From Epithemia pelagica (Eukaryota; Protista; Bacillariophyta): a DNA stretch of 64,000 nt. The translations under genes and the position numbers were made by a program. The notes under the pieces are model-generated. The model had not been told where the DNA came from. It made no database searches and saw nothing but the letters and a program-made list of their open reading frames with translations. The DNA is taken from the NCBI GenBank assembly GCA_946965045.2, contig OX337238.1, forward strand, positions 1,364,001 through 1,428,000. The letters run 5' to 3'. This document shows positions 9,047 through 56,010 of this stretch, in pieces (positions within the stretch are counted from its first letter, which is position 1; each line of letters opens with the position of its first letter).

Positions 9047-10012
9047 ATGGTCGTTGGAGAGGTACCAAACTGGAACTCAGTCACGGGGAACTGTTAGACT
9101 GTCAAACAGAGAGAGAGGAGGTCGTTCGTCACTGCGCAACTCTCCAGAGGTGTTGGATACGAGTGCTGTCGTCCTGCGTGTTGTTGTTCTTGTTGACTAT
9201 ACTTGTTGTGTTCCAAAAGAGAGGAGGTCGCCCGTGTTCTGTTGCCACAAAAAGGCTTGCTTCTTTCTACGTGGTTGTGGATGACACCAAAAGTAGGTAC
9301 CTGCCAATGAAACCAGAGAGGGAGAGAGTTGTGTCTTGGTTTGGAGTGACTTGGCACAAATCAAAAGTGTTTGTTCCGAACGGATCACCACCGCAGCGCC
9401 CACCACTCGAATTTTCCAAATTTCTGTCATCTCTCTCCAAATTTGGTACGAATGTCATTTATCCAGTTCGTCGGCCGTTCCTAGAAATCAATTAGACTAC
9501 CAAAGGAACAGCACAAAATCCGGTGCGAGTCATGGTGAAACCCAGTACACATAAAAAATGAGAATTCGGAAGGTCGGAACGGAGCCAACCTGGATGGGAC
9601 TTCTAAGTAAAACTGGCAACGCGGGACTCATTCGGCATTCCTACGCCGAAATAGTCTTCCAAGACCAAAAGATCCGCTATGAAATTTTATCAAATAATTT
9701 CTTCAAGATGGCCGGCGCTTTGGGGACTTCGGAGTCTACAGTCCACGCACCATGATTCCGATTTCCTCCGCTCCCCTCATTGAAATTGCCTTAAAAGCTG
9801 GTTCCGTCTCGGACGAGAGGCTGCCAAGAGATCGGCCAATAACCTGTCGAGTCCGAACGAGAAGTCTGGCTAGTAGTCATAACACAACCTATCCTAGTTA
9901 ATCATTGCCTTGAAGCAGATAGTGTTGACAGTCCATAGCTAAAACCCGAATTTCGACAATGGCTAATTTCACTAGTATCTGTTACGACTATGGACTATGG
10001 ATCTGTGGACGA

Positions 10013-11593: not shown

Positions 11594-11788
11594 CTTTCCG
11601 TTGAACGGACCAATTATGTTTTTTCAGTTACCGCGCCTGCTTGCAATGCCGTGTGACTGCGAGAGGGAAAGTCAACTTGTTTCTGATTGCAAGCATGCCA
11701 GTCACACAAAGACAACGGAGTGCTCAGAAGAAGAACTTCACGTCGAAGTCTCGCAATCTCTTGCCATCATAAATTTTGTCTCAATGAA

Positions 11789-31778: not shown

Positions 31779-32187
31779 TGCGTTTCCCGCCAACCTCTGT
31801 TGGGTCTGGGTACGTCCTGCACCTAAAAGATGAAAGGGCTTTAAGCAGGTCTAGATGGAACGAGAGAAGATTGGCACAGTTACTTCATTACGAGACGAAG
31901 AACTGTGAGGGGACCAAAATATGGCTAGCCTATTGAGCGAATTTAGCGATAGTAAGGCCTCTAAGCTAGAGGCATGAGATAGTCACAATTTTATATTTTT
32001 GAGTCACACCCCTACGCGTATTTTGGTTGCGTCACAGAAACACTGGTCTTCAGCGGCTAAGTTACGTTTCCGACGGTCCGGCACGTGCTTCAACCCTTGT
32101 TTCGCAATTCTTTTCTTGGCAGCAGTGTAGGAACGCAGGGCTCGTGCGCCTTCCGAGTCACGAAGGAGCGACTCTGTTTCATCACTA

Positions 32188-35117: not shown

Positions 35118-35131
35118 GATTAACAGTCTCA
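35118..35131 (+). other. Putative primer-binding site complementary to a tRNA-Asn(GTT) anticodon arm
   Basis: GATTAACAGTCTCA directly follows the 5' LTR. Its reverse complement TGAGA-CTGTTAA-TC has the form stem, Asn anticodon loop, start of the 3' stem. Confidence 0.6.
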
Positions 35132-35155
35132 TCGTTTATTTCCGAGAAGCTTTCG

Positions 35156-35911
35156 ATGTCTCACGACGATTCCAACCTCTCTATTCGGCACATCTTTCAT
35201 TCCTTCCAACAAAGCGGGGAGGAACTCCATCCACCCGTGTCCCATCCGGGCGAGCCCTTGATTGAAACTCCGAAACAGACCCCGACTCAGGCCAGTGCTC
35301 CGAATCCCTTCCAGACCCCGGACCAAGTGGTCCAGCCTCCTTCGATTCCGACTCACCCTTCGACTCCGCCTCGCCGTTTGAACCCTACTCGCACCCGACG
35401 TACGAGTCGTCTTCTTACTGCGCATATCCGACACTTCCGCGAGCCGACTGAGTCGACTACCGACCCCGACGTGATCCGTTCCACAACCAAACGCGAGATC
35501 GATTTCCAGTCCGTCCAACCCGTGACTGACCTTGAGGACATCCAACGACTTCTCGACCTCTTGTACCAGTGCTCGAGACGCCGTTTCATTGTCCAAGCCC
35601 TGTTGGGCAACCCTGTGGAACCCATCCGTATTCGATTCATCTCCTTTGAACGTCCAACCAACTACTTCCACACCATCTGGATCGTCAACTTGACGACGAA
35701 TCCGCTACCTACCCCGACTACTCGTCTCGACGAGTACGTCTCCTTTGTTCACGAGATCCATCTCTGCCAGGATTTCCGTGCGACTATCTACCCTCTCTTC
35801 ACTCAACACGTGAACCACTTGTTGGAAGACGACGACGTTGAAGAACTAGCCACTACAGTGACCGATTCCGCATCTCGTCTTCAGTACCGAGCCGAAAGTG
35901 ACCAAGAATAA
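35156..35911 (+). CDS. Extra ORF upstream of gag-pol in the CoDi-like element
   Basis: 251 aa from ATG 35156, Pro/Thr-rich N-terminal half, no recognised domain, 176 bp upstream of the gag-pol ATG. Confidence 0.45.
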   Translation: MSHDDSNLSIRHIFHSFQQSGEELHPPVSHPGEPLIETPKQTPTQASAPNPFQTPDQVVQPPSIPTHPSTPPRRLNPTRTRRTSRLLTAHIRHFREPTESTTDPDVIRSTTKREIDFQSVQPVTDLEDIQRLLDLLYQCSRRRFIVQALLGNPVEPIRIRFISFERPTNYFHTIWIVNLTTNPLPTPTTRLDEYVSFVHEIHLCQDFRATIYPLFTQHVNHLLEDDDVEELATTVTDSASRLQYRAESDQE

Positions 35912-36087
35912 GTAACTTTACGTAGTTTCTACACCAAACCAGACACAAAACCGAGTTCCGCACATCCGGGTTCCAAGCACATCACACATCCGGGTACCTA
36001 CATACGTGTCACATCCGGGTAAATAAAATTTTCGCAAGGACATCACGCTACACACTGTAATAACAGCTGAACCATACAAGTACTATC

Positions 36088-39000: not shown

Positions 39001-41768
39001 ATCATGAATGCCTCCGGTTGCCCTGCTTCTGCATGGTTACTTTGTTTAGAATATGTGTGTGACCTCCTCAATCACACTTCCTCTCCCACCCACTCTGGCC
39101 ACACCCCTCTTGAGGCTCTTACCGGTACCCCACCCGACATTACCCATCTCCTTTTCTTTCCTTTCTGGGATGAGGTCTACTATCGTGTCGACCCTTCTGA
39201 ACCTACCTCCGATTCTTACCCTTCGTCTCCCGACGAGAAGCTTGGCCACTGGGTTGGTTTTGCCCACAATGTTGGTGATGCCTTTACTTGGAAGATCCTC
39301 ACTGCCGACAACGTCATCATCTACCGTTCCGCTGTCCGTCGCGTTGCCTCCACTACCCCCAACCTTCGTGTGGATATCTCTTCAGGGGAGGAGTTGCCGC
39401 ATGAACCCACTGACAAGCAAGGTGACACTGTCTTTATTCGCAGCAGAAGTGAAGACCCATCCACACCTATGCCAACAATTGACTACGACGATTTAGTTGG
39501 ACGCACATTCCTTTGTGACACTGAAGAGAATGGGGAGCGCCACCGAGCACGAGTAATTAAACGAGTTGTCGACCTGGAACAAGATGCAACCAAACAAGAA
39601 GATCGACTCAAATATATCTTTCGCAAGTCTAACTCCAATGTTGATGAGATGATCTCCTACAACCAGCTCATGGAATACATTGAAAGGGATAATCAAGCCC
39701 AAACGACAGGGGATAGTCTCTTCCGATTCAGAGACGTTATTGCACACCAAGGACCTTTGAACTCAAGCGATCCAGACTATAAAGGGAGTAAATATAATGT
39801 CCTTGTTGATTGGGAGACTGGGATGACGACATACGAACCTCTATCTCTTATTGCAAATGATGACCCCATCACAGTCGCCATCTATGCCAAGAAAAATGGT
39901 TTGCTGGATCTACCTGGATGGAAACATCTCAAGCGATACGTCAAGACAAGCAAAAGACTCATTCGAGCAGCTAAACAATCCAGGATCAAACAAGTTTGTC
40001 GCTCTATCAAGTACAAGTTTGGTTTCCAAGTACCTCACACCTATGAAGAAGCAGTGGAACTAGACAAGCAATTTGGGAACACGAAATGGCAAGACGCAAC
40101 AGAATTGGAACTCTTACAGATCCAATCGTATAACACTTTCAAGGACCATGGAAAAGCCAAGTTCATTAATGGGAAATTGGCCAATGCACCAGAAGGATAT
40201 CATAAGATAAGAGTACATCTGGTCTTTGATGTCAAGCATGACGGAAGGCACAAGGCACGACTTGTCGCAGATGGACATCTCACCAAGGAACCCGTTGAGA
40301 CCATCTATTCAGGGGTTGTCTCCATTCGCAACCTTCGCATTGCCATATTTCTTGGAACCATGAACGACATGGAAATATGGGGAGCAGATATTGGGAACGC
40401 ATACCTAGAAGCATTGACAGGAGAGAAGATTTTCATCATTGCAGGACCAGAGTTCAAGGAGTTAGAAGGACATATCTTGATCATCTACAAGGCATTATAT
40501 GGTCTCAAATCCTCAGGTGCTCGCTGGCATGACAAACTGTTTGATGTTCTCATTGATATGGGATTTTCTCCAAGCAAGGCTGACCCTGATATTTGGATGA
40601 AGAAGGCTCCTGGAGAAGACTGTTATGAATATATCGCTGTATATGTTGATGACTTAGCTATCGTTGCCATGGACCATGAAGCTGTCTGTAAGATCTTTAC
40701 AGAAAAATACAACTTCAAACTCAAAGGAGTCGGACCTATCGAGTATCATTTGGGGTGTCGTTATACCAAAGATCCAGATGGTACACTTGTGTCTGACCCA
40801 CGAAGGTACATCGAGAAGATGATGGATACCTATGAACGATTGTTCAATGAGAAACCCAAGAAAGCAAAGCCGCCAGTCATTGCTAACGATCATCCTGAAC
40901 TCGATGACTCGGAGCTCTTAGATGAAGAAGGGACCCAGCATTTCCAGACTCTTATTGGACAACTGCAATGGCTAATTACCATTGGCCGTTTGGATGTCTT
41001 TCCTGCTACCATGACTCTATCAAGGTTCAGAGCTGCTCCAAGGATTGGTCATTTGAAGCGAGCTAAACGCATCTATGGATACCTCATGTCATTTCCTGAT
41101 GGGTCTATCAGATTCCGCACTGGGGAGCCAGATTTATCAGCTTTACTTATCCAAGAATACGATTGGAGTCTACCGTATACATGGACGCCAAGGAACGTAT
41201 CCCTGAGGACTGTCCAACCCCACTTGGGCGTTTTGTGACAACTATACATTATGTCGACGCAAATCTCATGCATGATATGGTTACTGGGAAAGCAGTTACA
41301 GCCATCCTGCATTTTGTAAATGGTACACCCGTGGACTGGTACAGTAAGCGACAAGCCACAGTGGAAACAGCCACGTATGGATCTGAATTTGTTGCCGCAA
41401 GGACTGCAGTTGATCAGATCACGGAGCTACGCCTTACACTCCGATACTTGGGAGTCCCTCTGCGAGAGAAGAGTTACATGTTTGGAGATAACCGCTCTGT
41501 CGTTATCAATAGCACCACACCACACTCAATCATCTCCAAGAGGCACCATCTCCTATCCTATCACCGAGTCCGTGAAGCTATCGCTGCAACGTACGTCACA
41601 TTCTACTGGAAAGATGGAAAGACAAACCCAGCTGATATCCTCAGTAAACATTGGGAATTCGCCGCAGTTTGGCCCATGCTCAGATCTTTGTTATTCTGGA
41701 GAGGAAAAATCCAGGAAAGTGATGAGGGAATTGACAATCCTCATTCGACGAATTGTGGGGAGTGTTAG
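36088..41768 (+). CDS. CoDi-like Gag-Pol polyprotein, frameshift near 41170 before RNase H
   Basis: 1716-aa ORF: gag, protease LIDRGANGG, integrase ATDSIFSD/LISDGG/QNKAE, RT KARLVADGH, ALYGLKSSG, YVDDL. RNase H (YVDANLMHD..FGDNRSV..NPADILSK) is in the next frame. Confidence 0.9.
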
Positions 41769-43284
41769 GATTCTCACCGAAAACTAGGTGGCGAAACCTA
41801 CAACTCATCGAATGATGCTAGTATTTTATGGCATCTAATGACATTTTCCTAAAAAGTGAGAAAAGAATGTTGGCATGCTCGCGAAACTATAAATTTGGCC
41901 ACGGCATGCTCGCATTGCACGTGTTATCGGCGACCGCTCGGATATTAACTATGGCCCAACACGTGCGCGCCCAAAACTATCAAGTGCGCGCCTCTACTAT
42001 CCGAGTACGCGCATCCACGATTCGACCTAACGGTCTATGTAATCAAAGCACGAATCACGATCACGCGAGACCATATCTCTGTTCCCACAAATCCAAGAAT
42101 GCAAACAGCAACGCGCCCAGGACAAGACTTATACCACGACAAAGCAAGAGCTGTTGCATCCCATACATGTTATCCATCACCCTATACATTCAATATACAC
42201 CAATGCCGGTCTACTCCAACCAGTGAGGACCTATCACACCAGATCCATGGCCGTATACAAGAGCCAGGACTTTGGCACCATCAACCACCTTAGTTAGTAA
42301 TCGTCTCACAATCATTAATATCACCATTTTAACACTCATCTTAAGACTAACCTCTTATCAGTGGACCAACTGCCCCCACCCACGGTGGACTTCGACTTGC
42401 AACTCTTCTCTGACCCGTGGAGGATTGTTGTATCGGTTGGTGATTCGATTGTTGGCTCAGCGAGCCTTTTACCTATCCTACCTATCTGTCTAACCCCTGT
42501 TGAATCGAGAGAAGTTTATCACATGGAACAGGACACTGCACTCATCATCCAGACCAACACAAGTGGTACGCAGGAGTAGGAGGAGGAGACTCTTCTGGTC
42601 CGTGGCGGCAGTCGATCTGTGGACGACATGTCTGCTATATAGTCTCGTGTTGGCAAATGGTCGTTGGAGAGGTACCAAACTGGAACTCAGTCACGGGGAA
42701 CTGTTAGACTGTCCAACAGAGAGAGAGGAGGTCGTTCGTCACTGCGCAACTCTCCAGAGGTGTTGGATGCGAGTGCTATCGTCCTGCGTGTTGTTGTTCT
42801 TGTTGACTATACTTGTTGTGTTCCAAAAGAGAGGAGGTCGCCCGTGTTCTGTTGCCACAAAAAGGCTTGCTTCTTTCTACGTGGTTGTGGATGACACCAA
42901 AAGTAGGTACCTGCCAATGAAACCAGAGAGGGAGAGAGTTGTGTCTTGGTTTGGAGTGACTTGGCACAAATCAAAAGTGTTTGTTCCGAACGGATCACCA
43001 CCGCAGCGCCCACCACTCGAATTTTCCAAATTTCTGTCATCTCTCTCCAAATTTGGTACGAATGTCATTTATCCAGTTCGTCGGCCGTTCCTAGAAATCA
43101 ATTACCAAAGGAACGGAGCACAAAATCCGGTGCGAGTCATGGTTAAACCCAGTCAGAGTTGTGAAGTAAAAAGTACCCTTTTTTGCAAAGTACCATACTT
43201 TTATACTATACTTTACCTTACTTCTACTTCCCGAAGTAAAGTAACCATCTCACTCGATCATTACTTTACTACACGAAGTACATT

Positions 43285-43970
43285 ACTCTTCTCCTTCTGC
43301 GTTATCGCAAAGTACATCATTAAAGTACCCCCCACTTTACACCACGTCATAAAGTAATCAAGTAAAGCACCACCATCGCTGACGACTGACTATAAGTACA
43401 TAGTAACTCACCACCATCGCTGACGACAAACTATAAGTACTTAGTAACTCACCACCACCCATGCTGGATACACAAAGTACGAAAGTCAAGTACCACTGTC
43501 AAGTATTATCCACCATTCAGTAGTATAACTACACAAAGTACATCACTCCTCTCCTACTGCGTTATCGCAAAGTACATCATTAAAGTACCCCCCACTTTAC
43601 ACCACGTCATAAAGTAATCAAGTAAAGCACCACCATCGCTGACGACTGACTATAAGTACATAGTAACTCACCACCACCCATGCTGGATACACAAAGTACA
43701 AAAGTCAAGTACCACTGTCAAGTATTATCCACCATTCAGTAGTATAACTACACAAAGTACATCACTCCTCTCCTACTGCGTTATCGCAAAGAACATCATT
43801 AAAGTACCCCCCACTTTACACCACGTCATAAAGTAATCAAGTAAAGCACCACCATCGCTGACGACTGACTATAAGTACATAGTAACTCACCACCACCCAT
43901 GCTGGATACACAAAGTACAAAAGTCAAGTACCACTGTCAAGTATTATCCACCATTCAGTAGTTTAACTAA
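43285..43970 (+). repeat. Left subterminal tandem repeat, ~3 units of ~220-260 bp, rich in AAGTA
   Basis: CTGCGTTATCGCAAAG(T/A)ACATCATTAAAGTACCCCCCACTTTACACC recurs at ~43297, ~43557 and ~43776. Confidence 0.9.
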
Positions 43971-44518
43971 GTTTATTGCTGAGGGTGGACGACGAGAAGT
44001 TGGGGACGACGAGGGGCAGTAACGACGAGAAGGGCAATAGCGACGAGGAGTGGACTGCCCCTGTGAGATCCGCGTAAGCGGATCGAGGGGGCAGTCCACG
44101 ACGAGAAGCTATTGCCGGACGAGGAGTTACGCCCTGAGAAGTGCCCCAACGACGAGGATTCCCCCGGGGCTATTAACTTATGTATGCTTCCTTTGTCGCG
44201 AGGAGTCGTGCCAAACGCGCGGCGTGACAATAGGTATTCTTCGCTCTGTTTATAGGCTTTCATCTACTTACGTACTTACATAGGATTGTCATAGGATTAT
44301 TCTTAACGCTCTTTACCTAAGAATATGTGCGTGCTGGCAATCTCACATTTATGCAATATGGTCAGAACATGCCAATCAAAATCCAATCGTGCTCCTTTCT
44401 ATAAGTGACCATCTTTCTTACATAGAGAAAAGCACGTGTTACTTAGAGTCACTATTCCTCCATCCCTCCCCCAACCATTGATACCAACAACACGACACCA
44501 TAACTCAAGACGAATAAC

Positions 44519-44836
44519 ATGGGAAAGTCGACCATGGTGACTCCTCCTCCGGGAGGAAACACCCGTCTTCCCACGAACTATACCCAAACCATCACTCCCC
44601 CTCCAATCATTGACCTCTGTACCCCTCCAGAGGTCATTGATCTTTGTTCTCCGTCGTCATCCTCTTCGGACTCATCAGGACAGACGCTCATCTTCCTTAC
44701 CAACGAAGGGAGCAAAAATGAGTGGGATGGCCGCTTATACAAGCGATCAGAGCTATATGACGACTGCACAGGGTCGGCCGAGGAACATAGCATCAGCTCT
44801 GACCCTTGGATCCAAGAAAAATGGAATAGGTGGTAA
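44519..44836 (+). CDS. Small ORF (105 aa) with tandem SUMO-interacting-motif-like sequences
   Basis: ATG start; contains PIIDLCTPPEVIDLCSPSSSSSDSS. Coding status is unproven. Confidence 0.4.
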   Translation: MGKSTMVTPPPGGNTRLPTNYTQTITPPPIIDLCTPPEVIDLCSPSSSSSDSSGQTLIFLTNEGSKNEWDGRLYKRSELYDDCTGSAEEHSISSDPWIQEKWNRW

Positions 44837-45060
44837 GTTGATGCCGTCGTTCTGGCCATTGTCGTGATTTCTCGTTGTTGTTTTCTTCCCAAAATTTTGA
44901 ATCCATCCGTCACGCGCGCGCATAGCCTAGTCGCTTTTATTGTTTGTACTAGAATCTACGTAGCCCCTACGACGCTGCACGTTCTCGCAAGTGTCACCCT
45001 CTTCCTTTGCACCTCTCTCATTTCCGCTCTTCATTTTGTCATTGTCGCAACAGTTTCACC

Positions 45061-48000
45061 ATGGCAACCCGCCAATCGCAGCGGATGCGGGAGCACTTGA
45101 ACTCCAATAGCGCACCACCCAACAACACTGGACAGGATGACGCAGTCCCTCCAGTCCCTCCGAATCTGCGACGTTCCGTACGTCGACTGGAAGCAGAATC
45201 GTCGTCGGAAGGAAACGACAACGACCCTGTCGCAAACGCAACAACAACAACAGTTCTTCCTCAAGAACCTCAGCAATCAAAGTAAGTCTAATAATGCTCT
45301 TGCTTCACCAGGTCTGTTAATACTTGTCTCTCACCATCGTTTGCTTTTGTTCTGCAGCATTTCGACTGCGGAGCTTGTTGCACGCAACGATTCTTCCAGG
45401 TTTGCGTTGTCAACAACAACGGCTCCTGAGGCAGCACCTGGCCAGGAGGAGGTTCCCATGACCAAGAAGCTGGACACCAAGCTTCTTTCTACGGCTGTAG
45501 TACAGCGCAAGCCGATCTCCTTGTGCGCAGAGACTGGTGCTGTGATGGTGTCCAAGTCCCTTGCAAGAGCACCTCCAACGATGGATGCTCAGTCGGCGCG
45601 CTCTATTGCTGCATGGACATCATACTGCAAGTTGTCCCCTACCATTCATGGGGAGTTCAATCTCTTCGACATCGGCGGCCTACGACAAGGACAAGGCCGC
45701 TTCGTTACAACGCTACTTCGGCCTTCTACAGAGACAAGAAGATTTCCATTTCCTACTGGAACCTATAGACAATCCAGATGAGCCAGATGACAGTGGAGAG
45801 AAACTCCCCATGCTATTTTATGTGCTGGGTGGAGTCAAGACTACTGGAAAGATCACGCTGTTGAACAACACCATGATCTGCTTCGTCCTGAATACACGGA
45901 TGAAGGGATACGATCCGACAACCCACTCAATGTGGGATGTCAAATTCAACTTCCAACCCAACTCGATGATGAAATTTCTCCACCACATCTTCGCCTGCCT
46001 TAAAGCCAACGGAGTGGCCCTAACACAGTCGGACCTCCGCTTTGGCCGTGGATCCTACCACGAACTCCTCGCCAACATGTGGGCGGATGCGGCAAAACAA
46101 CGATCTGAATTTGGGCGGCTACCCTTCAGGGTCATCACTGCCTTACACGACGAGCAAAAGATGAAACACGCAGAACCCAAACTTCGCCTGCAGATTGAAA
46201 AGGGCAACGAAAATAACAACGAATTGCGGATGGCCGTCTTTTATATGTTCTCTCGTGACACGTCGGACCGAAATGGTGAAGTAAGTTGTTGTGTTGTTGA
46301 TTGTTTGTTGTTGATTGTTTGTCCACTCACTCTTTGATTGTTGCTTTCTTGTGATTGCAGGCTAGACTTGCTAAAGTTAGTGACTTTGTGTTCGTCAAAA
46401 AATTAGACAAGTCGTATGGAATGTTGTCCGGACTCGTTGCAATGATTCCGAAGGAATCCATCGAAGAGAAGACGTCCAAGCTGACGACGAGTAAGACAGC
46501 GATCGACCGAACCGTGGATCACACCGCGAACATGATCATCGACAACCCTTCCGACGAGAACTGCACGTACAAAGTGCTGATGCGGTACATGAAGATTACC
46601 CAGCCGCCAGGGTGGCAAGGATTGATCTTCCTCGAGCGAATCCCAGCGAAGCACATGGCCGCTCGGAAAGATGGTGCAACGCACCTCGGGTGGACCGAAT
46701 TGGTCCCCGAAACCTCGAAGACTGACGGAGACGGGTCGGGTTTCAAATGCGCAGGTAGATTGGGTGCGAATTTCCCGAACCGAAACTTGAAAGCTCTGGC
46801 CCGTCGCTGCGGATTTGAAAACGCGGAGAGAGTCACTGGTCGGACGGGCCGTCGCACGGGAATTACCAAAGTTGCAAACAGTGGCATCCCGCAAGCATTG
46901 GCCCGACAATACGGACGCCACGCAACCGACAAGGCGAACGAAAAGTACCAGGACGCCACGGCGCGATCGAAGCAGATTGCTTTGACGGCGAATTGGTACT
47001 CGGGCTCGGAAGACGAGAACAAAGATCCCAAAAAAGGTAAGCCCGTTGTCGTTGATTGTCGCGTCAAGTTTCATGGTTGTTCACTCATTTTCTTTTGCTT
47101 TTGATTCGGCCACAAAAGACAAAAAGAAGAACAAGAAGAAGAAAAAGAAGCGATCAAAGAAGAAGCACTCATCATCATCCTCGTCATCATCATGTGATGC
47201 ATCTGCTTCATCGTCCTTGTTGTCGTCGACAGAATTCAGAGTGCTCTTGAAGCGAGCAAAAATGGAGACGTTTCAGCAACGAAAAATAGACAAGTTGGAA
47301 CACGCCAAAAAGAAGATGGAGACGTCCTCTGGTGCTGACAATGACAACAGCGACAGCTCACTCAGCCACCACAAATCCAAGAAGCGTAGCTCAAACCACA
47401 AAAAGAAAGGTATGTTGATTGTTGCAATGGATGCTTGATTGTTGTGTCGTCCTTTTGCTCATTTCATTGGTTTTGGTTAAACAGACAAGAAGAAGAAGAA
47501 GAAGAAGAAGAAGAAGAAGAAGAAGAAGAAGAAGAAGAAGAAGAAGAAGAAGAAGAAGAAGAAGAAGAAGAAGAAGAAGAAGAAGAAGAAGAAGAAGAAG
47601 AAGAAGAAGAAGAAGAAGAAGAAGCGTCGCAAAACCTCTTCTACAGCCGCGTTGTCGTTGTCATCGTCTTCGTCATCTTCTGGTGACAATCTCTTTCGTG
47701 AATTGGGTAGATTGGAGAAAAAGAAGAACAAGAAGAACCCACAACAACCACCTCCTGTTGTTTCTGTTGTTGGTACGATGAATTTGAATTGTTGCTTTTC
47801 GTCCTGTTAACACTGGTTTCTCACCGACTCTCGTTCCTTTTTGACAAAGGCCAAGTCGAAAAAGAGAACACAACACCATTGTCATCAACCATGGCCAAGA
47901 AAGTTGCTGACGTGATGGACAACAAGTTGAAGAAGAAGTACTCGAGTACTTCTTCGCCTGGAAAAGATTTGGTGCTTGCCACCCGTCACCACCACAATGC

Positions 48001-48541
48001 ACCCACAGAGACGACGGTAGCTTCCTCGCACAGAGTTGCTGTCTCCTTGCAACAACCATTGTCGCCAAGCCCATTGCGTACCAGACGCCCAACTGCTCCT
48101 GGTCGTTACCACGACCATTCAGTGGATTGTCATATTGGTGGTGGTCGTCATTCGGACGACCGTGTCGTGGAGCATCATTTGTCGTCGTACGCCTACCATC
48201 GCCAGGGGCACAACAATGTTTATGCATCCCAGTCGGCGTCGTACTCACCCTCTCCACCACCACCCTCCCATTCTCGGCATCATCATTCCTCCTCCTTGAC
48301 TCATGAGTACCACCGCCGCCATCAATATGACCCGTCACCATCGCCACCGCCACCACCTCCTTCGTATCGTGCTCCAGCATACCCTTATTACCACCACAAT
48401 CATCATTCCCACCATCACCATCACCACCGTAGTGGATACACGCCACCGCCGCCGCCGCCGCCTCCTCGTTCCTCTTCTTCTCTCCATTACCATCACGAAC
48501 ATCGCGGCAACCATCACGGTCATCACCGCTACCACCACTGA
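45061..48541 (+). CDS. Multi-exon tyrosine-recombinase-like (Crypton/DUF3504-like) gene with a low-complexity C-terminal tail; apparent frameshift near 45675
   Basis: Introns at 45282-45357, 46281-46360 and from 47037. The spliced product has DRNGE-ARLAKVSD (catalytic Arg box), TSKT, TGRTGRRTGIT (HxxR-like) and GRHATDKANEKY (H..Y nucleophile). 3' exon structure is uncertain. Confidence 0.65.
47487..47624 (+). repeat. (AAG)n microsatellite, ~45 units
   Basis: Seen directly. Confidence 0.95.
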
Positions 48542-49280
48542 CTTCGTGTCTTGCCAGCCATGCCTCCAAGTACTTCTTCTTCCGACTATAGACGTTGATG
48601 CGTTGAAGGTACGTTGATTGTTGCGCCTGTCCTCTCTCTTTACCTTGTCTCGGCCACACAGTTGTCTCACGCAGTCTCGTTTTTGTATTTTTGCCTTGGA
48701 ACGAAATTTTGGATGTCTTCTTCTGTTTCGGTCGTGTTTATCCGCTCGTTGTTACACGTTACGATCACTGTCTCTGTCCGTTGTCTCCGCCTTTTGTCAT
48801 GTTGCCCCTATGCCTGTTGGTCTGTTGCTGGTTGACTGTCCGTTTCTGTCCGTTTTCGACTGTTTCCGTTTTTGGCGCGTTCCGTTTCTGTGGGTGCTAC
48901 TTTTCTGTGGGTGCTACTTTTCTCTGGGAGCTACTTTTCCGTTTTGGGCTATTCTAAATTCTTACACTAAAATAAAAATCCAATTACAGTAATTTTTAGG
49001 GCTTATCTATTTGGGGGTGAAAGTAGGGAAAGGCACGACGAGGAGTGATAAAGGTAGAAAGTAAATCCTCATCTCACTCCCTTTCTACTTTCCACGATCT
49101 TTCCACGCATTCTTTTCCCCCATTAATCCAATCTCACACATACAACAGATGAGGATAAGCACCTCTGGTAACAGCATGGTATCGTTTCACCGCCTCCTCC
49201 TCTCCTCCTCTCACACACAGCAACCAAACAAGTTTCATACATACCTTTGTTATTCTTGAGATACTGTTCATTGTTTCACC

Positions 49281-52146
49281 ATGCCGGACGATCCGGGAGA
49301 ATCTCCATCAAAAGGGGATGAAGCCCCTTTACCTTCATCATCTAAAAAGCGAACTCCCAAACCGAAGAAAAAGACTCCTAAATCCAACAAGACTCCGTCA
49401 TCCAAGAAGAAACCTCCGCCCTCTACAAATCCGAAGAAGAAATCTCCCTTACAACGCAAACCCTCGGCATTGAAAAAACAACAAGCAAAAGTCGACGCTT
49501 ACTTTGCACAAATCGAAGGAGTTATCGACACTGCCGCTAAGAACGAGAAAGAGATGGTTCCTCTTCTCGACACTGTTCATCCCTATTTCTTGTCCTTTCC
49601 GAATCATTCCAAGTGGTGGGATTTCGCAGTACACATCGATTGGGCATTGCTTGAGAACAACATCATTGGAGTGGAGCATAATTATTACGAGTTTGCTGGC
49701 ATGCGCAAAATTATCAACCAACTCAAAGCCTTTGTCAAGGTTGGGGAAAACCCTGTCCCACTCGATGCCCCTCCAGCCAAACATGCTGAACTTTCAAAAG
49801 AGCGTTTTGGAGAAGTCTGTCGGAAATGTATCATTTGCCCCATCTGTTTCCGAGATGATAAGAAGACACTTTCAGAATCAGTTGTTCTATGTGGTTCCCT
49901 CCGCCCATCCAACATTTCACAGCACTGTGACAAGAAGCATAAAGAGTTTGACATTGATGCCGACCAGGAGAGGAAGGTTTCTACTTATAAGCAATCTACT
50001 ATGTCTCACTGCCGGAAGGACCACACAACAAAATCAGCAACTCAATCCAAATTCCAAATGCTGATATACCGGTTCGTGAACGACTGTTGCCTTCCAGCAA
50101 TCACAGTCGAGAAACCTCAGTTTTGCAAAATGATCCAGTTTGCCATGGAAAATGCCGGCTTGCTAAAGGGCAGCCGTGTTGAGATCATGAGTCGGCGGCA
50201 GATCACGAAGATTCGGATCTCGTCGTATCAGAACTTTTTCCTTGTTGTTGCCTCTCTCGTCCGCAAGGCCAGAGCTGAATACAACCGTCTCTGTTCCCAA
50301 GACGTTCCATTTGTCACTTGCTGCCACGATATTTGGCAAGCCCGTGACCATGATGTGCTCGGTGTCACCATCATGTTTACAGATCCGCGTAATTGCACAA
50401 TCTACCGGATCCCCATCGGCCTTGCCGAATGCCATGGTCACGCGGCAACAGATGTTGCAAATTTGACGGACCATCTCCTCTTGAGTGTTGGTCTCACCTC
50501 CAAAGATCTCTGCGCGGCCGTGAATGACAATACCTCCGCGGCTGTTTTGGCGGGGAAGTACATTATCGGCAACCCCGACAAGGCTGGTAAGTGCAATATG
50601 CACAAGGCCGAATTGATCCTGAAACACGCAACGGGTCTTGTCGAACGATACAACAACCATATCTTGATGGATAGTAATAAGCTCTTTTGCGATTGCTGGA
50701 TGATTTTCAAGAAATTTGCTTCATGGCTCACTGCCAAGAAAGCCCCTCACCGTTGAAGAAAGTTCAAGGAGGGCATCAAGAAACTTGGCGGACGGGTTGT
50801 TGTCATTCCCCTCCCCAACGACACCCGAGTTGGTGGTTGTGTCTTATCCAAGCAGTCACTTCTACGCAACAAAAAGATGATGGATCTGTACGTAAAGACT
50901 GCAGTCCGAAGCGACTCTCAATTCAAGGAACACTATCCTGAGGAAGACGACTGGAAGGTGAATGCACAATACGACGGCATCCTAACAAATTTGAAGCGGG
51001 TCTCCATGAAACTCCAAACAGACGACCCAGGAGCCAACTCTGCGTCTTTACTTGAGATTTATACGGCCTTCTATCATGCCCAGATAATGCGTATGGAAGA
51101 GCCTGACTGTGGAGTTGGGGTTTTGCCTATCTCTTCCGATGACAGTGATATTTTTTTGGATGCAAGTTGCACAATGGATGACCTAGAAGAGATGCGGCGA
51201 CTAATCCCATACAAGGAGCTAGAACCCGGTGCCCGACTTCTTATCCGACGCATAATTCAAGAATACAGGCACTACCTATTCAACCGCGACCCTGATGCAC
51301 TAAAGGCTGTATGTGCGAATCCTCTGTTGGCCAGTGTCTATGCTGACATGTTTGTGAGTTTTGGAGTTTACGACTTGGATACAGTGAAGGAAGGGCGTCG
51401 TATTTTCGTCCAAGACATGGTTGATCTCCACATAAATGCTCGTGTTTCAACTATCGGAGCTGCAATGGCGAAACAAGGACAACAGGGCGACAAGAAACAA
51501 GGAAACCGCTTCTTCATCGGGCAATTCAGCAACACTGAAATACAAAGCAATCGATGTGTTTGAACGAATTCGACGCTCCAGCGATTTGAAGAACCAAGGT
51601 ATGCTCCATCTAACAGGAAGGGCATCAAATGCAGCAAAAGAAAAAGAAATCGAAGAGGCACTCCGCAAAGCCTGCAATGATTCGTACGATGATTTCCTGC
51701 GACACTGCCGTTCCCAAATTGACAATAACTGGGAGCAGGTTATCAAGCAGTACCCAACACCCAAGTTCCTGGACGAATATGACGACTGGTCTGCCGAAGC
51801 TGAGGAAACATTCTCGCGCCATTGCCACAATCGCAACTACCTTGAAGTAGGCCAACACTTTGATCTGATGGGTTGGTGGAACGTGCACTCCAGCAATTGG
51901 GAATATGTGTTCCCGTCGGCAATCATCTGGTTGGCCAAACCGGCCACCAATGCCTTCCAAGAGAGAATCTTCTCTATCGGGAGTTGGATGCTCCAGAATA
52001 AGTTAATGGGCAACATGAAAAAAAAACGAATGAAATGCGTACTATGGAGTACATTAACAGAAAAGTCTTGGAGGAGATTACAACGAACGAGAAGAACATT
52101 GAAAAGGGCATTGGCACCAGTAAGTCATACGACAAACGGATTGTGA
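49281..52146 (+). pseudogene. hAT transposase with BED finger; one in-frame TGA (50754) and frameshifts near 51500 and 52020
   Basis: BED-like CPIC..SNISQHCDKKH, DDE core CCHDIWQ / VNDNTS / CNMHKAELIL / NDTRV, and C-terminal dimerisation-domain motif WWNVH..LAKPATNAFQERIFS. Confidence 0.88.
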
Positions 52147-52286
52147 TCCCCGAGGATGCGGCAATGGATGCGGCAGTCGAATTGAGTCTTTAAGACCAAC
52201 GGAAAAAGTTTCAAACCTCGGCCGTCCGGGATGCGACTACGGGCTTCCGCCAGTATTCCCACTCACACAAAGTCAACAGCAATGTC

Positions 52287-53300
52287 TTGGAAGACCCGGT
52301 AGTTGGGGGCACGTACTATCCCGTGGTTGGGTACAAAAAGCCAGCGGAAGAAGACAACGGACAGAATGAATCAACAACCATTCCGGTCCCACCACCAGAG
52401 GAGGTACCCAAAGTTGCTGGGGTTGTACCTCCGTTGCCTGACGATGAAGATGACAAGGATGGAACTGAAGCGGTGGCAATGGATAGTGCAATGGACAATG
52501 TGGTCTACAAGTTGTCGACTCATGGAGAAACTACAACTCCAATTGACTTCAACCGGGCTGTATATGTGGAGATTGATGCCAAATACGAAGACGATTCGGT
52601 AGCCTCCTCATTGCCTATACCAAAGGATCCAGACGAAGATAGTGATGGGATCATTGACCATGTACTGGACAAGGAATTGTGGGACGAGACGGACGACGAT
52701 CCTCGTCTAGAAGAACTCGTTACCATGCCGGATGACAATGAGGGAGAAGACAAAACCGGAGATGACAAAACCAGAGATGACGGCGATGATACTGACGTGC
52801 AGGTCATCAAAGTTACGAAACCCGACAATACCGACAATACAAAGACCGATAATACGCCAAAAGGGAAAAAAGCAAAGAAGGATGCACCGGTCCAGTCCAC
52901 ATTGGGATGGAAACGTAAACCTAGTCCATCCAGTGCTCCCACATCTCCGGCAAAGAAGAGAAACAAAACCGTACCCATTGGACAATCTCCTCGCATTCGC
53001 AAAAACAACAAGAAACTGTTAAAGGACAGGGCAACCAAGCGGTCTCAGGTGAACACAGAGGAGAATGACGAGATGTCAGTGGACAGAGACTTGGAAAAAG
53101 ACGAGAGTGCTCCGAATACAGGAGAAGAGGATGACGATGGCAATGATGAAAACCAAGACCAAGGAGATGACGACGTGTGTGACGATGAAGAAGAAGAATC
53201 GACCCGTTCGGATGGTGATGACGATGACAACGATGATGAAAACGACGATGACAAACGCGATGAAGAAGAAGAAGAAGACGAAGACGATGCCGAAGAATAA
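52287..53300 (+). CDS. Acidic low-complexity ORF, possibly the frameshifted C-terminal tail of the transposase
   Basis: 337-aa Asp/Glu-rich ORF with basic NLS-like patches (KRKPS, PAKKR), directly downstream of the transposase on the same strand. Confidence 0.45.
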   Translation: MEDPVVGGTYYPVVGYKKPAEEDNGQNESTTIPVPPPEEVPKVAGVVPPLPDDEDDKDGTEAVAMDSAMDNVVYKLSTHGETTTPIDFNRAVYVEIDAKYEDDSVASSLPIPKDPDEDSDGIIDHVLDKELWDETDDDPRLEELVTMPDDNEGEDKTGDDKTRDDGDDTDVQVIKVTKPDNTDNTKTDNTPKGKKAKKDAPVQSTLGWKRKPSPSSAPTSPAKKRNKTVPIGQSPRIRKNNKKLLKDRATKRSQVNTEENDEMSVDRDLEKDESAPNTGEEDDDGNDENQDQGDDDVCDDEEEESTRSDGDDDDNDDENDDDKRDEEEEEDEDDAEE

Positions 53301-53402
53301 AAGAACGAACCAAAAAGAGAAGATGAGTGTGAAACATGAGATTTACAGAAGAAGATTTTACTATTGGAATTTATGAATTTACCACAAAGAGCGATTAAGA
53401 GT

Positions 53403-55214
53403 TTAGGAGAATACTTGATATTTGTAGATCATGGACTCGATTGTTTTGCGCATAGAGAAATCAACTCTGTCCGTCTGGCGCAACTGCGATAGGAATGCTG
53501 TTCGTGATTCATAAGATACGGAATGTTGTCCGAACGCACCAAAGAGGGGATTGATGACATGCCAAGTTTCAGGGGGCAGCCAAGATTCGAGAACTTTGGA
53601 ACATGGCAAAGCAGTGACACCTTTCGGGACCCATCCAAGATGCTCACTCCACCTGATGACATGAATGTCGGACGGTATACCATCCACTCTTTGAAACGCC
53701 GTTTTGATCACTATGCAGGCGGTTTTGTATCCAATGCCATACAACGTAGTCAACTCGTAGATTGTTATGTCGTTTGGAATTTTCCCATGATGCCGTTGAC
53801 AGAAGTAGTCTGCCGCATTAACGATTCTCTCAGTGTTTTGATAGTATCGACCGGACTCTGAGAAGATGGAACAAAGGGCATCCATTCCATATTGTTGCGT
53901 GATTTCTATGACGGCCATTGCTGAAGTGAGGCCAAAAGCAAACAGCCGTGGCATGATTGAGCTCAGTTGAAGATCCGACGTACTGCTGCTCATGCAAATT
54001 GTCATTAAAATCATGAAAGGTCGATCAGCACTAGGGTCATGTTGACAGTCAAGCCAACTTGTCCATTTGTCCCGAGGTGCGAAGAATCCTTTTTCTTGGA
54101 GTTCCTCGTGGAAAGCAATCATCTGGGAAAGCATGGAAAGTCTTTTCTCCACAATGCTCTCCTCAAGCATCCGGATATTAAGTCCACATTTCGGTGGAGT
54201 CATCAATAATGGAGGTTTCCCAGGTTGGTGTCTCCGGTCAGGATATGATATTTCCAGTTTGGAGCGAGATGCGGATTGAAGCAATTTGGCTACTGTTGAA
54301 GTCCAGTGTCTTGTTGAGTATGAGTGTGTACCCGTGGGAGATTTCTTTGGTGAACCTTTCGACTGGTTCTTTTTGGGTGTAGACTGGTTTTGGATCTCAT
54401 GGGGTAAAGAAATCTCCATCTTTCCACTGTCTTCCGGCAAGGAATCGGTCGATGACAATTGGTCGTTGGTAGGAGTGGGTAATGTAGGACTGTTTGAGAC
54501 GTTTGGTTTGTATTGACTAGCAAAGAGTTGCTGCAATAATGACAAGTAGGGCCGCAGGTGCACTGGAAAGAGCGTCTGTTGTGTTGCCATTTCTTCCGTA
54601 TGAGAATCCGCAACGTAGTAATCAACGATGAAATCTTGTGCGCATGGTTTGCAATAGATGGCACAACCAGTGCGGATAAACCATGATGAGATGATGGTTT
54701 CGGTAGGAATGGGTGGGCCTTGTATGCACATTTGCTTGGTGAATTCCATGCATTGCTCGAATTTGGAATTCTCCATTACAGTGAAGAAAGGGTCGCAACT
54801 TATGGAAAGTATCAGCCGGTTGGAGTCGTTTGATTCGTTAGGGATGAAAAAGTGTTGGAATGAGTCGATTGGATGCTGTTTGGGAAACCCATCTTTTAAT
54901 GTCCGCACGATGATGCACACAATCAGTTGTACTTGTTCCCAGAAATGGAATGGTTGGAGTAGGCAGGGATGAGACTGTGATTGCGATGTGTTCCATTCTT
55001 TGTAGAAGATGAAGCCATCGTGCCGGATGAGCCACGATATGGTTTGTTGATGAACAGCATAACGGAGTGCGTTGGGTGTCATGGAAGGTTGCTCTGTGCC
55101 GTTGATGAAATCGTCCATAAGAGTAAAGAAAGGTTTACTCGAGTGGAGAACGTACATGGGCCGGCATTTAGATTTGAATTGAATTGTGTTGTGTTCGATA
55201 AATTCATTCATCAT
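53403..55214 (-). CDS. Endonuclease III/NTH1-like HhH-GPD DNA glycosylase/AP lyase with a long N-terminal extension and no Fe-S motif
   Basis: Intact ORF (probable ATG 55214). PFMILMTICMSSSTSD, HHGKIPND, HhH motif LTTLYGIGYKTACIV, GIPSDIHVIRW and WLPPETWHVINPLFGAFGQ parallel Nth/NTHL1 motifs. Confidence 0.85.
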   Translation of the reverse strand: MMNEFIEHNTIQFKSKCRPMYVLHSSKPFFTLMDDFINGTEQPSMTPNALRYAVHQQTISWLIRHDGFIFYKEWNTSQSQSHPCLLQPFHFWEQVQLIVCIIVRTLKDGFPKQHPIDSFQHFFIPNESNDSNRLILSISCDPFFTVMENSKFEQCMEFTKQMCIQGPPIPTETIISSWFIRTGCAIYCKPCAQDFIVDYYVADSHTEEMATQQTLFPVHLRPYLSLLQQLFASQYKPNVSNSPTLPTPTNDQLSSTDSLPEDSGKMEISLPHEIQNQSTPKKNQSKGSPKKSPTGTHSYSTRHWTSTVAKLLQSASRSKLEISYPDRRHQPGKPPLLMTPPKCGLNIRMLEESIVEKRLSMLSQMIAFHEELQEKGFFAPRDKWTSWLDCQHDPSADRPFMILMTICMSSSTSDLQLSSIMPRLFAFGLTSAMAVIEITQQYGMDALCSIFSESGRYYQNTERIVNAADYFCQRHHGKIPNDITIYELTTLYGIGYKTACIVIKTAFQRVDGIPSDIHVIRWSEHLGWVPKGVTALPCSKVLESWLPPETWHVINPLFGAFGQHSVSYESRTAFLSQLRQTDRVDFSMRKTIESMIYKYQVFS

Positions 55215-56010
55215 GTATTGATGATTGTGGGGAGAGAGTATATCAGAGAGGCAGAAGCGGCAGAGGTGAATGTGCTGTGCTCTGGGAGTGAAGCAGATAC
55301 AGCATGTCAGTCGGACATAGAAGTATGGGGTGTACTGAAGTAACAAAGTAAGACTACTTCGGTGCTAGGAAAGTAAGTGTGGGCTGTGGTTTTTGTTCTA
55401 TCCATAGTACGAAAGTAAAGTAAGGGAAGAATTGGAATGGTAGCTTAAGTAGAGGAGTAAAGTAACTGGTGAGAAGTAGTGATTTGTGGGTGGGGGAAGT
55501 ACTACGTGCTTGTTTGTGGGAAACTTACTAAGTCACGAAGTAAAGTATTACATATTATACATATTAGTATAGACTTTGAAAGTAAAGTATAGAGTTAGTT
55601 TAAGTCTGACTAGAAATATCGAAGTAAAGTACTGAATAATATACAGAGTGGATATAAGTATGTAAGAATAGTACGTACTTAAAGAGAATTTACTTATTAG
55701 TATATAAGGAGTCTAGAACGTGGATTAAAGTTACTTCACAACTCTGAACCCAGTACACATAAAAAATGAGAATCCGGAAGGTCGGAACGGAACCAACCTG
55801 GATGGGACTTCTAAGTAAAACTGGCAACGCGGGACTCATTCGGCATTCCTACGCCGTAATAGTCTTCCAAGACCAAAAGATCCGGTATGAAATTTTATCA
55901 AATAATTTCTTTACGATGGCCGGCGCTTGGGGGACTTCGGAGTCTACACTACAATCCAAACCACAAACTATGATTCCCATTTTCCTCCGCTCTCCTCATT
56001 ACAGTATCAG

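What the first reader, a model, noticed from the sequence alone, without database searches (positions are those of the whole stretch)
43154..55746. 12.6-kb hAT transposon carrying a tyrosine recombinase, a DNA glycosylase and a SIM-like peptide as cargo
Seen: perfect 16-bp CAG-initiated TIRs, an 8-bp TSD and the empty site in copy A (9539-9546) show the whole 12,593 bp inserted as one unit. Known: 8-bp TSDs, CAG ends and BED/DDE/dimerisation motifs define hAT elements, which typically encode only a transposase. Inferred: the three extra DNA- or chromatin-related genes may form a functional module, such as a second recombination route or counter-silencing, rather than random captured DNA. I do not recognise this combination from any described element.
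Basis: partly seen in the sequence, partly recalled or inferred. Interest (0 to 1): 0.92.

Follow-up and report, generated by a model that had tools for sequence, protein, structure and literature searches.

The report
Glycosylase-carrying hAT transposon with nested Crypton
The 12.6-kb insertion is real, but it is two jumping genes, one inside the other: a hAT transposon from a lineage that always carries its own DNA-repair-type glycosylase gene, which appears to be undescribed, and a separate tyrosine-recombinase (Crypton-like) element that later landed inside it.

Summary
Perfect 16-bp CAG-initiated TIRs, a perfect 8-bp TSD (AACCCAGT) and an uninterrupted site in the paralogous copy A show one 12,593-bp insertion.

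The "three-cargo module" reading holds for only one gene.

1. The tyrosine-recombinase gene and the SIM-like ORF belong to a separate 5,096-bp Crypton-like element (43962-49057). It is flanked by GTAG, and the 97.6%-identical sister hAT copy and all eight other related hAT loci examined lack it. Two related copies lie end-to-end colinear at non-hAT loci. Its recombinase is frameshifted here.

2. The acidic ORF is the transposase's own C-terminal tail, cut off by a +1 shift in an A9 run.

3. The glycosylase is a genuine element gene. At all ten loci examined (nine fetched plus the window) an endonuclease III/NTH1-like gene lies tail-to-tail with a hAT transposase. Six fetched elements and the window show both genes inside the TIRs with perfect 8-bp TSDs. 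The glycosylase and transposase trees are congruent, synonymous sites are saturated while the protein is conserved, and the catalytic Lys and Asp are kept.

This copy is a fossil: its transposase has a nonsense codon and a 14-bp deletion. I found no paper on a transposon-encoded HhH-GPD glycosylase. The scan had already noted the same hAT-glycosylase pairing on other pieces of this genome.

The parts
9539..9546 (.). Empty target site (AACCCAGT) in paralogous copy A
   Evidence: the empty-site contig is also seen in reads
43146..43153 (.). Left 8-bp target-site duplication, AACCCAGT
43154..43169 (+). Left hAT TIR, CAGAGTTGTGAAGTAA
43268..43961 (+). Left subterminal region of the hAT with about three copies of a 219-bp tandem repeat; the sister copy has fewer
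43962..49057 (+). Nested 5,096-bp Crypton-like tyrosine-recombinase element. GTAG lies before its first base and forms its last four bases. It has no TIR, no LTR and no RT.
   Evidence: Absent from sister copy L001 with a clean junction. Colinear end to end with L009 and L010. No terminal repeats. Single-copy read depth against about 2x for the hAT part.
44033..44116 (.). Internal inverted repeat: 29-nt arms around a 26-nt spacer. Candidate recombinase site. Very high read depth. The enclosing 91-bp segment 44026-44116 matches L010 at 100% only in inverted orientation.
44519..44832 (+). SIM-like ORF (IIDLC..VIDLC followed by a Ser/acidic tract); probable first exon of the Crypton gene, conserved in L009 and L010
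45054..47036 (+). Tyrosine-recombinase-like gene body. Inferred exons are 45054-45281, 45358-46280 and 46361-47036. It is frameshifted near 45650-45685 relative to the open 353-codon exon of L010.
   Evidence: recombinase assignment
47100..48541 (+). Lys-rich and His/Pro-rich low-complexity 3' part of the Crypton gene region, including (AAG)n at 47487-47624
49281..52146 (+). hAT transposase pseudogene. TGG>TGA at 50754-50756, a 14-bp deletion after 51505, and the hAT dimerisation domain near 51802-52000.
52017..53300 (+). Acidic C-terminal tail of the transposase, separated from the core by a +1 shift in an A9 run (52017-52025). The shift is shared with L001.
53403..55214 (-). Intact 603-codon gene. 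The N-terminal 234-aa domain has no recognisable fold. The C-terminal domain is endonuclease III/NTH1-like HhH-GPD with catalytic Lys (GIGYKTA) and Asp (PSDIHV) and no Fe-S cysteines.
55731..55746 (-). Right hAT TIR
55747..55754 (.). Right 8-bp target-site duplication, AACCCAGT

Best explanation
The unit was built by two independent mobile-element events. First, a hAT element of about 7.5 kb inserted into copy B of a local duplication and made the AACCCAGT duplication. This element belongs to a lineage whose standard gene set is a long transposase (about 1,200-1,300 aa with an acidic tail) plus a convergently oriented endonuclease III/NTH1-like DNA glycosylase. Second, a 5.1-kb Crypton-like tyrosine-recombinase element, whose first exon carries the SIM-like motifs, integrated at a GTAG site. 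That site lies in the left subterminal repeat region of this hAT copy or of its immediate ancestor. Both mobility genes have since decayed here. The transposase has a nonsense codon, a 14-bp deletion and a tail-separating frameshift, and the recombinase has a frameshift. Only the glycosylase ORF is still open. Shown: the structure, the nesting, the co-inheritance of glycosylase and transposase, and purifying selection on the glycosylase. Inferred, about 35-40%: the glycosylase is a bifunctional glycosylase/AP-lyase that acts on the element's own DNA, removing methylated cytosine or deaminated or oxidised pyrimidines to counter methylation-based silencing or mutational decay.
For: Ends, TSD and empty site.

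Nesting of the recombinase element:
- Sister copy L001 is 97.6% identical over 49054-55697 and has the same left end, but jumps from 43961 to 49058.
- The insert's last base coincides with the last aligned base of related elements in L009 and L010, whose flanks are unrelated and not hAT.
- GTAG or AGGTAG direct repeats sit at the boundaries, and there are no terminal repeats.
- Read depth is about 92-108 over the insert against 150-290 over the hAT part.
- The recombinase is frameshifted relative to L010.

The glycosylase as part of the hAT:
- All nine fetched loci with context (L001-L008, L011), like the window, place it tail-to-tail with a hAT transposase.
- Six complete elements have perfect 8-bp TSDs.
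- L006 and L007 differ by 3 nt in 6,798 bp and sit at different loci.
- The glycosylase and transposase trees have the same unrooted topology; Mantel r = 0.93, exact p = 0.001.
- pS is about 0.8 (saturated) against pN of 0.26-0.48.

Identity of the glycosylase:
- Profile against human NTHL1 gives E = 5.5e-18 with Lys and Asp aligned.
- Foldseek hits NTHL1 and EndoIII.

Transposase lesions.
Against: No RNA data could be obtained, so splicing, expression and the exon model of the Crypton gene are inferred. The recombinase assignment rests on language-model features (0.96), a weak integrase HMM hit (E = 0.018) and visible motifs. Pfam and PDB sequence searches found nothing. Whether the Crypton entered before or after this hAT copy inserted here is unknown. 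The biochemical substrate of the glycosylase is untested, and it lacks the Fe-S cluster that DME/ROS1-type 5mC glycosylases need. Nearly all family members come from one assembly, so the taxonomic breadth is unclear.
Confidence: 0.82

Rival explanations
1. One reading: the whole 12.6 kb is one hAT family member whose recombinase, glycosylase and SIM peptide form a co-adapted functional module.
For: All three lie between one pair of TIRs with one TSD. A DDE-transposon/Crypton composite that moves as a unit is known in Fusarium (MarCry-1_FO, PMC3212892).
Against: The sister copy and eight other related hAT loci lack the recombinase/SIM segment. The segment has its own conserved ends and has relatives outside hATs. 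It is at single-copy depth. The recombinase and the transposase are both broken here.
Confidence: 0.03
2. The 5.1-kb segment is ancestral to this hAT family and was deleted in L001 by recombination between GTAG microhomologies.
For: A 4-bp repeat at a junction is also what a microhomology-mediated deletion leaves.
Against: The supposed deletion would have to coincide to the base with both ends of an element family found independently at two other loci. None of the other hAT subfamilies has the segment.
Confidence: 0.03
3. The glycosylase serves the transposition reaction or its repair rather than silencing. Examples are processing of donor-site hairpins or gaps, nicking at abasic sites to favour repair-templated copy gain, or target choice.
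For: Endonuclease III-type enzymes with the catalytic Lys are AP-lyases that nick DNA (established for E. coli Nth and human NTHL1; Lys and Asp are conserved). The gene is strictly linked to the transposase.
Against: No other hAT needs such a factor, and Hermes and Ac transpose with transposase alone (established knowledge). No direct evidence exists either way.
Confidence: 0.25
4. The glycosylase is a passively captured host NTH1 gene with no role for the element.
For: DNA transposons do capture host genes. Its nearest relatives outside the family are ordinary Nth proteins.
Against: ORFs are open in seven divergent subfamilies with saturated synonymous change. Its tree is congruent with the transposase tree. 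A conserved extra N-terminal domain is found only in this family. 22 of 27 full-length representatives keep both catalytic motifs.
Confidence: 0.05

Closest known systems
hAT superfamily (Ac, hobo, Tam3, Hermes)
   Same: 8-bp TSD, short TIRs beginning CAG (YARNG type), the PF05699 dimerisation domain, and conserved D / D / E-bearing blocks (HDIW, NDN, QERIFS).
   Different: The transposase is about twice as long and has an acidic tail. A second, convergent glycosylase gene is a constant part of the element. Canonical hATs encode only a transposase.
TET/JBP-carrying DNA transposons of fungi, including hAT7 (Kojima 2025, PMC12730594)
   Same: DNA transposons, some of them hAT, that stably carry an enzyme acting on modified DNA bases. 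That enzyme is thought to counter methylation silencing.
   Different: The enzyme class differs (HhH-GPD glycosylase, not a dioxygenase), the host is a probable diatom, and the TSD is 8 bp. Here the gene co-diverges with the transposase, whereas TET/JBP genes hop between superfamilies.
Endonuclease III / NTHL1 (HhH-GPD superfamily); more distantly MIG, MutY and DME/ROS1
   Same: Same fold, the HhH motif with catalytic Lys, and the catalytic Asp.
   Different: There is no [4Fe-4S] cysteine cluster. An extra conserved domain of about 230 aa at the N-terminus has no detectable structural relative. The gene is encoded by a transposon.
Crypton elements, especially CryptonS of oomycetes and a diatom (Kojima and Jurka 2011, PMC3212892)
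   Same: A recombinase-only element with introns, no TIR, LTR or RT, short 4-6-bp direct repeats at its boundaries, and a stramenopile host.
   Different: The termini are ..GGTAG, not TATGG. The N-terminal exon carries tandem SIM-like motifs. An internal 29-nt inverted-repeat site is found inverted between copies. The recombinase domain is too divergent for Pfam.
MarCry-1_FO (Mariner-Crypton composite of Fusarium oxysporum)
   Same: A Crypton lying inside a TIR transposon.
   Different: MarCry has several near-identical composite copies with TSDs and moves as a unit. Here only one copy holds the Crypton, so it is a simple nested insertion.

Membership tests
hAT superfamily | 8-bp target-site duplication | tested here: met
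   AACCCAGT on both sides with an empty site in copy A; six related elements have perfect 8-bp TSDs
hAT superfamily | Short TIRs with a 5' YARNG start | tested here: met
   CAGAG... as a 16-bp perfect TIR; the family consensus is CAGRGTTGTGWAGTA
hAT superfamily | C-terminal hAT dimerisation domain (PF05699) | tested here: met
   Window scores 24.7 bits against a cut-off of 21.4. L004, L005 and L008 score 32.2, 25.8 and 26.2 bits. Hermes matches the same region at E = 0.007.
hAT superfamily | DDE catalytic core in an RNase H-like fold | tested here: inconclusive
   Alignment A5 has invariant D in HDIW, D in NDN and E in QERIFS, and the window ORFs show the same motifs. No fold or profile match covers the core.
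hAT superfamily | N-terminal BED-type zinc finger | tested here: inconclusive
   A CxxC...HxxxxH pattern (ICPICF...SQHCDKKH) is present, but Pfam zf-BED was not detected.
hAT superfamily | Intact transposase (autonomous copy) | tested here: not met
   TGA at 50754-50756, a 14-bp deletion after 51505 and a +1 shift in the A9 run at 52017-52025. This bears on autonomy, not on family membership.
Crypton (tyrosine-recombinase DNA transposon) | Encodes a tyrosine recombinase | tested here: inconclusive
   Atlas features score 0.96; 84 of 100 named hits are PF00589 clusters and some are DUF3504. phrog_1 integrase gives E = 0.018 over the RTGRR...RH...Y region. Pfam and PDB sequence searches were negative.
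Crypton (tyrosine-recombinase DNA transposon) | No TIRs, LTRs or reverse transcriptase | tested here: met
   No terminal repeats; no RT or other Pfam domain in its ORFs
Crypton (tyrosine-recombinase DNA transposon) | Short (4-6 bp) direct repeats at both boundaries | tested here: met
   Window GTAG/GTAG, L009 AGGTAG/AGGTAG, L010 GTCG/GTAG (imperfect)
Crypton (tyrosine-recombinase DNA transposon) | Several copies with the same ends at unrelated loci | tested here: met
   L009 and L010 are colinear from the 5' region to the last base; their flanks are unrelated and not hAT
Endonuclease III / Nth family (HhH-GPD) | HhH-GPD fold and sequence profile | tested here: met
   NTHL1 at E = 5.5e-18 and EndoIII at 7.7e-13. 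Foldseek hits NTHL1 and EndoIII at 4e-8 to 5e-6, with TM by target up to 0.72. Pfam PF00730 is only sub-threshold for the single sequence.
Endonuclease III / Nth family (HhH-GPD) | Catalytic Lys in the HhH motif and catalytic Asp | tested here: met
   K497 and D516 are invariant in A1 and align to the NTHL1 catalytic positions. 22 of 27 full-length representatives keep both motifs.
Endonuclease III / Nth family (HhH-GPD) | C-terminal [4Fe-4S] Cys-X6-Cys-X2-Cys-X5-Cys cluster | tested here: not met
   No cysteine in the last 45 or so residues of the window protein, and no conserved Cys after the GQHS motif in A1
Endonuclease III / Nth family (HhH-GPD) | Glycosylase / AP-lyase activity | not testable with these tools
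   Needs an enzyme assay
Transposon accessory gene (as in TET/JBP-positive transposons) | The gene lies inside TIR/TSD boundaries in several families and is co-inherited with the transposase | tested here: met
   Six complete elements plus the window; identical tree topology and Mantel p = 0.001

The most novel reading that the evidence does not exclude
A diatom hAT lineage has carried, since before its diversification into many subfamilies, its own clusterless Nth-type DNA glycosylase fused to a domain of unknown fold. The enzyme would work as a transposon-encoded counter-silencing or self-repair factor, excising methylated, deaminated or oxidised pyrimidines on the element. That would make it the first glycosylase-based counterpart of the TET/JBP-carrying fungal transposons.
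Probability: 0.35. Interest if true: 0.85.

Novelty: new variant of a known kind. Interest (0 to 1): 0.62.

Why it matters
Transposons that carry enzymes acting on DNA modifications are rare. The described cases I found are the TET/JBP dioxygenases in fungal transposons (PMC12730594). Other known counter-silencing factors, such as the VANC proteins of plant VANDAL elements, are not enzymes; this rests on my own knowledge.

A hAT lineage that has kept a catalytically competent-looking base-excision enzyme through deep diversification, and that was moving very recently (two copies differ by 3 nt in 6.8 kb), offers a direct experimental route into how transposons in diatoms deal with DNA methylation or base damage.

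For annotation, the result also warns that large "cargo-rich" DNA transposons can be nested composites. Here sister copies and read depth separated the cargo from the passenger.

Tried and rejected
- RNA evidence: both run searches returned only three assembly-like DNA runs and two marine metagenome runs. No spliced joints were seen, so expression and introns stay inferred.
- Pfam found nothing for the recombinase ORFs, the SIM ORF, the low-complexity ORFs or the glycosylase N-terminal domain.
- A PDB profile search with the recombinase alignment gave only a spurious helicase hit.
- Exon 2 of the recombinase gene had no homologue besides itself in the 5.8-billion-protein search, and its Atlas features were uninformative.
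- The N-terminal domain of the glycosylase (pLDDT 86) had no match in PDB by Foldseek, in AFDB clusters, or in the wide VIA-align search, where the best Z was 4.6.
- A scan of JGI metagenome contigs with the glycosylase alignment found nothing.
- The short contigs from other data sets (L012, L013) showed no transposase, so linkage outside this assembly is untested.
- No TIR was found for the L002 element, which is interrupted by a Copia and runs off the locus.
- Considered and rejected: deletion in L001 instead of insertion here, composite mobilisation, and passive gene capture. See the rival explanations.


Full report
**Observation.** The element begins at 43154 with CAGAGTTGTGAAGTAA and ends at 55746 with its exact reverse complement. 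AACCCAGT sits immediately outside both ends. Copy A carries the same flanks joined through a single AACCCAGT at 9539-9546. A self-BLAST of the window shows that region A (2231-14875) and region B (19544-56984) are 96-99% identical paralogues. Region B has gained several insertions:
- two LTR retrotransposons, at 25735-32025 and at 34358-42531 (the latter with 770-bp LTRs);
- the 12,593-bp unit, whose flanks abut exactly at its ends.

Contigs from public read sets cross the left junction and also show the empty form.

**What is inside.** The only Pfam hit in the unit is the hAT dimerisation domain, in a plus-strand ORF (51436-52146, 24.7 bits against a cut-off of 21.4). The transposase therefore runs on the plus strand from 49281. 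The long minus-strand ORF (53403-55346; first ATG at 55214) ends in a clear HhH motif with Lys and a following Asp. As a single sequence it scores only sub-threshold for HhH-GPD. The region 44.5-48.5 kb holds an intron-containing plus-strand gene with a recombinase-like C-terminal exon.

**The glycosylase is part of the hAT.** A search of 5.8 billion proteins found seven clusters, 33-97% identical and aligned over 83-92% of the query. All came from one ENA assembly. I fetched every locus (L001-L008), and later L011 from a further subfamily. In all nine, the glycosylase is followed tail-to-tail by a long ORF of 973-1,300 aa. For five of them that ORF carries a precomputed hAT dimerisation hit. 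My own Pfam scan confirmed the domain above threshold for three, and just below it for L001. Six elements have both ends:

| Locus | Coordinates | 8-bp TSD |
|---|---|---|
| L003 | 5204-16542 | CTCACCAA |
| L004 | 9524-16342 | CTTAAAAG |
| L005 | 9397-16491 | CCCGATAG |
| L006 | 9541-16338 | TTGTTCAC |
| L007 | 9541-16338 | ATTCAGGC |
| L008 | 9525-15909 | GTCCGCAC |

All six share TIRs of the type CAGRGTTGTGWAGTA. L006 and L007 lie on different contigs and differ by 3 nt in 6,798 bp, so the two-gene element moved very recently.

Further evidence that the gene is maintained:
- Trees of the glycosylase and the transposase from seven subfamilies have the same unrooted topology. Pairwise identities correlate (Mantel r = 0.93, exact p = 0.001).
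- Between subfamilies, synonymous sites are saturated (pS about 0.8) while pN is 0.26-0.48, and all seven distinct ORFs compared are open.
- A profile search of 1.84 billion representatives gave 44 proteins at E <= 1e-30. The scores then drop to ordinary Nth proteins.
- Seventeen 90%-identity clusters with 84 member sequences were inspected. Almost all come from the same assembly; three come from other data sets on short contigs.

**What the glycosylase is.** The family profile matches human NTHL1 (E = 5.5e-18) and bacterial endonuclease III (7.7e-13). The catalytic Lys (GIGYKTA against GVGPKMA) and Asp (PSDIHV against VDTHV) are aligned. An AlphaFold model has pLDDT 80-92 in this domain and hits NTHL1, EndoIII, MIG and MutY by Foldseek. 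No cysteine follows the GQHS motif, so the [4Fe-4S] cluster of canonical Nth is absent. The N-terminal 234 residues form a confidently predicted alpha/beta domain (pLDDT 86, pTM 0.77) with four conserved Cys/His positions: invariant C84 and near-invariant C17, H82 and C140. This domain has no structural match in PDB or AFDB clusters; the best Z was 4.6.

**The recombinase and the SIM-like ORF are a nested element.** L001 is a sister copy of the window's hAT. It is 97.6% identical over 49054-55697 and has the same left TIR in a different flank. That flank is the one seen as a loose end in the reads. L001 passes directly from ...CATTCAGTAG to AAAGTAAATCC..., which correspond to window 43961 and 49058. 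The extra 5,096 bp in the window are preceded by GTAG and end in GTAG.

Evidence that this is an independent element:
- Two loci elsewhere (L009, L010), found through the recombinase exon at 58-61% identity, are colinear with the insert. The match runs from its 5' region to exactly its last base. Beyond that point the flanks are unrelated and contain no hAT sequence.
- Their boundaries show the same short repeat: AGGTAG/AGGTAG in L009 and GTCG/GTAG in L010.
- The insert has no terminal inverted or long direct repeats and no RT.
- Read depth over 44200-47362 is at the single-copy level (92 and 108). The hAT part runs at 150-290.
- None of the other hAT subfamilies has the segment.

These are the properties of a Crypton: recombinase only, no terminal repeats, 4-6-bp boundary repeats, known from oomycetes and a diatom (PMC3212892). 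The recombinase assignment itself is moderately supported:
- Atlas features score 0.96 to PF00589 and DUF3504 clusters.
- phrog_1 integrase gives E = 0.018.
- An RTGRR...RH...Y pattern is conserved in the three copies.
- Pfam and PDB sequence searches were negative.

The SIM-like ORF (44519-44832; IIDLC..VIDLC plus a Ser/acidic run) is conserved in L009 and L010. It can be spliced in frame to the next exon (inference). The window's recombinase exon is split between two frames near 45650-45685, whereas L010 has one open 353-codon exon, so this copy is broken.

**The acidic ORF.** ORF 52287-53300 is homologous to the C-terminal tails of the continuous 1,092-1,300-aa transposases of the other subfamilies. 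In the window and in L001 it is detached by one extra A in an A9 run at 52017-52025. Reading one base fewer restores ...MKKKNEMRTMEY..., which matches the family consensus.

**State of this copy.** Relative to L001, the window's transposase has TGG>TGA at 50754-50756 and a 14-bp deletion after 51505. L001 in turn has a 1-bp deletion near the 3' end of its glycosylase and has lost its right end. The window's glycosylase ORF is intact. Against L001, dN/dS is 0.40 from 25 differences, too few to say much.

**Mechanism.** The following are shown:
- hAT-type insertion;
- Crypton-type nested integration at a GTAG site;
- long-term co-inheritance of the glycosylase with the transposase, and selection on the glycosylase.

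The rest is inferred. The enzyme is probably a bifunctional glycosylase/AP-lyase acting for the element's benefit. The leading idea (about 35-40%) is removal of methylated cytosine or of deaminated or oxidised pyrimidines, to oppose silencing or decay. This parallels the TET/JBP genes of fungal transposons (PMC12730594). A role in the transposition or repair reaction itself (about 25%) cannot be excluded. That diatom transposons are methylated is my own knowledge, not tested here.

**Novelty.** Five full-text searches found no report of a transposon-encoded HhH-GPD or endonuclease III gene. Earlier notes of this scan (s1-248246 with a follow-up, s1-242306, s1-226434) describe the same hAT-glycosylase pairing on other pieces of this genome. 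My results agree with them and add the co-phylogeny, the family size and the dissection of this composite. The Crypton is a new member of a known kind. The hAT with a glycosylase is a new variant of a known kind.

Noticed in passing
window 44026-44116; L010 6869-6959: The 91-bp segment around the inverted repeat near the Crypton's 5' end (29-nt arms, 26-nt spacer) matches L010 at 100% only in reverse orientation, while its flanks align forward. This suggests a recombinase-mediated invertible site. Read depth here is 20-45 times single copy.
   Followed up: partly
window 44519-44832; L009 8064-8489; L010 7322-7747: Tandem SUMO-interaction-like motifs ([IV]IDLCTPP[ED]VIDLCS plus a Ser/acidic run) are conserved in the first exon of all three Crypton copies. 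Kojima and Jurka report Ulp1-type (SUMO protease family) peptidases in some CryptonS elements, which hints at a SUMO link.
   Followed up: partly
window 52017-52025; same position in L001: The transposase tail is out of frame because of an A9 run, and both copies, which are 2.4% diverged, share this. It could be an old mutation, a homopolymer assembly error, or a slippage site. One base fewer restores the family consensus.
   Followed up: partly
L006 9541-16338 and L007 9541-16338: Two complete 6,798-bp glycosylase-hAT elements on different contigs differ by only 3 nt and have different perfect TSDs. This family was active very recently and would be the one to test experimentally.
   Followed up: yes
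L003 5204-16542: An 11.3-kb member of the same hAT lineage holds a piggyBac-type transposase gene (DDE_Tnp_1_7, 5739-7916). It is probably another nested insertion.
   Followed up: no
window 53743-54688 (reads): Read contigs in two runs join 53742 to 54689, a 946-bp deletion variant of the glycosylase gene at about single-copy depth. Another contig leaves the element at 55732, inside the right TIR. At least one further, rearranged copy exists.
   Followed up: no
window 2231-14875 vs 19544-56984: This is a large local duplication (96-99% identity) in which copy B has gained two LTR retrotransposons (25735-32025; 34358-42531 with 770-bp LTRs) plus the hAT. Copy A has its own 4.2-kb insertion (9741-13994) containing 37-bp tandem repeats.
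   Followed up: partly
window 43268-43961: The hAT's left subterminal region carries about three copies of a 219-bp tandem repeat rich in AAGTA/TACTT motifs. The sister copy has fewer. These may be transposase-binding repeats.
   Followed up: no
glycosylase residues 1-234 (window 54513-55214, minus strand): The conserved N-terminal domain, with invariant C84 and near-invariant C17, H82 and C140 (possibly a metal site), is confidently modelled but has no structural relative in PDB or AFDB clusters.
   Followed up: yes
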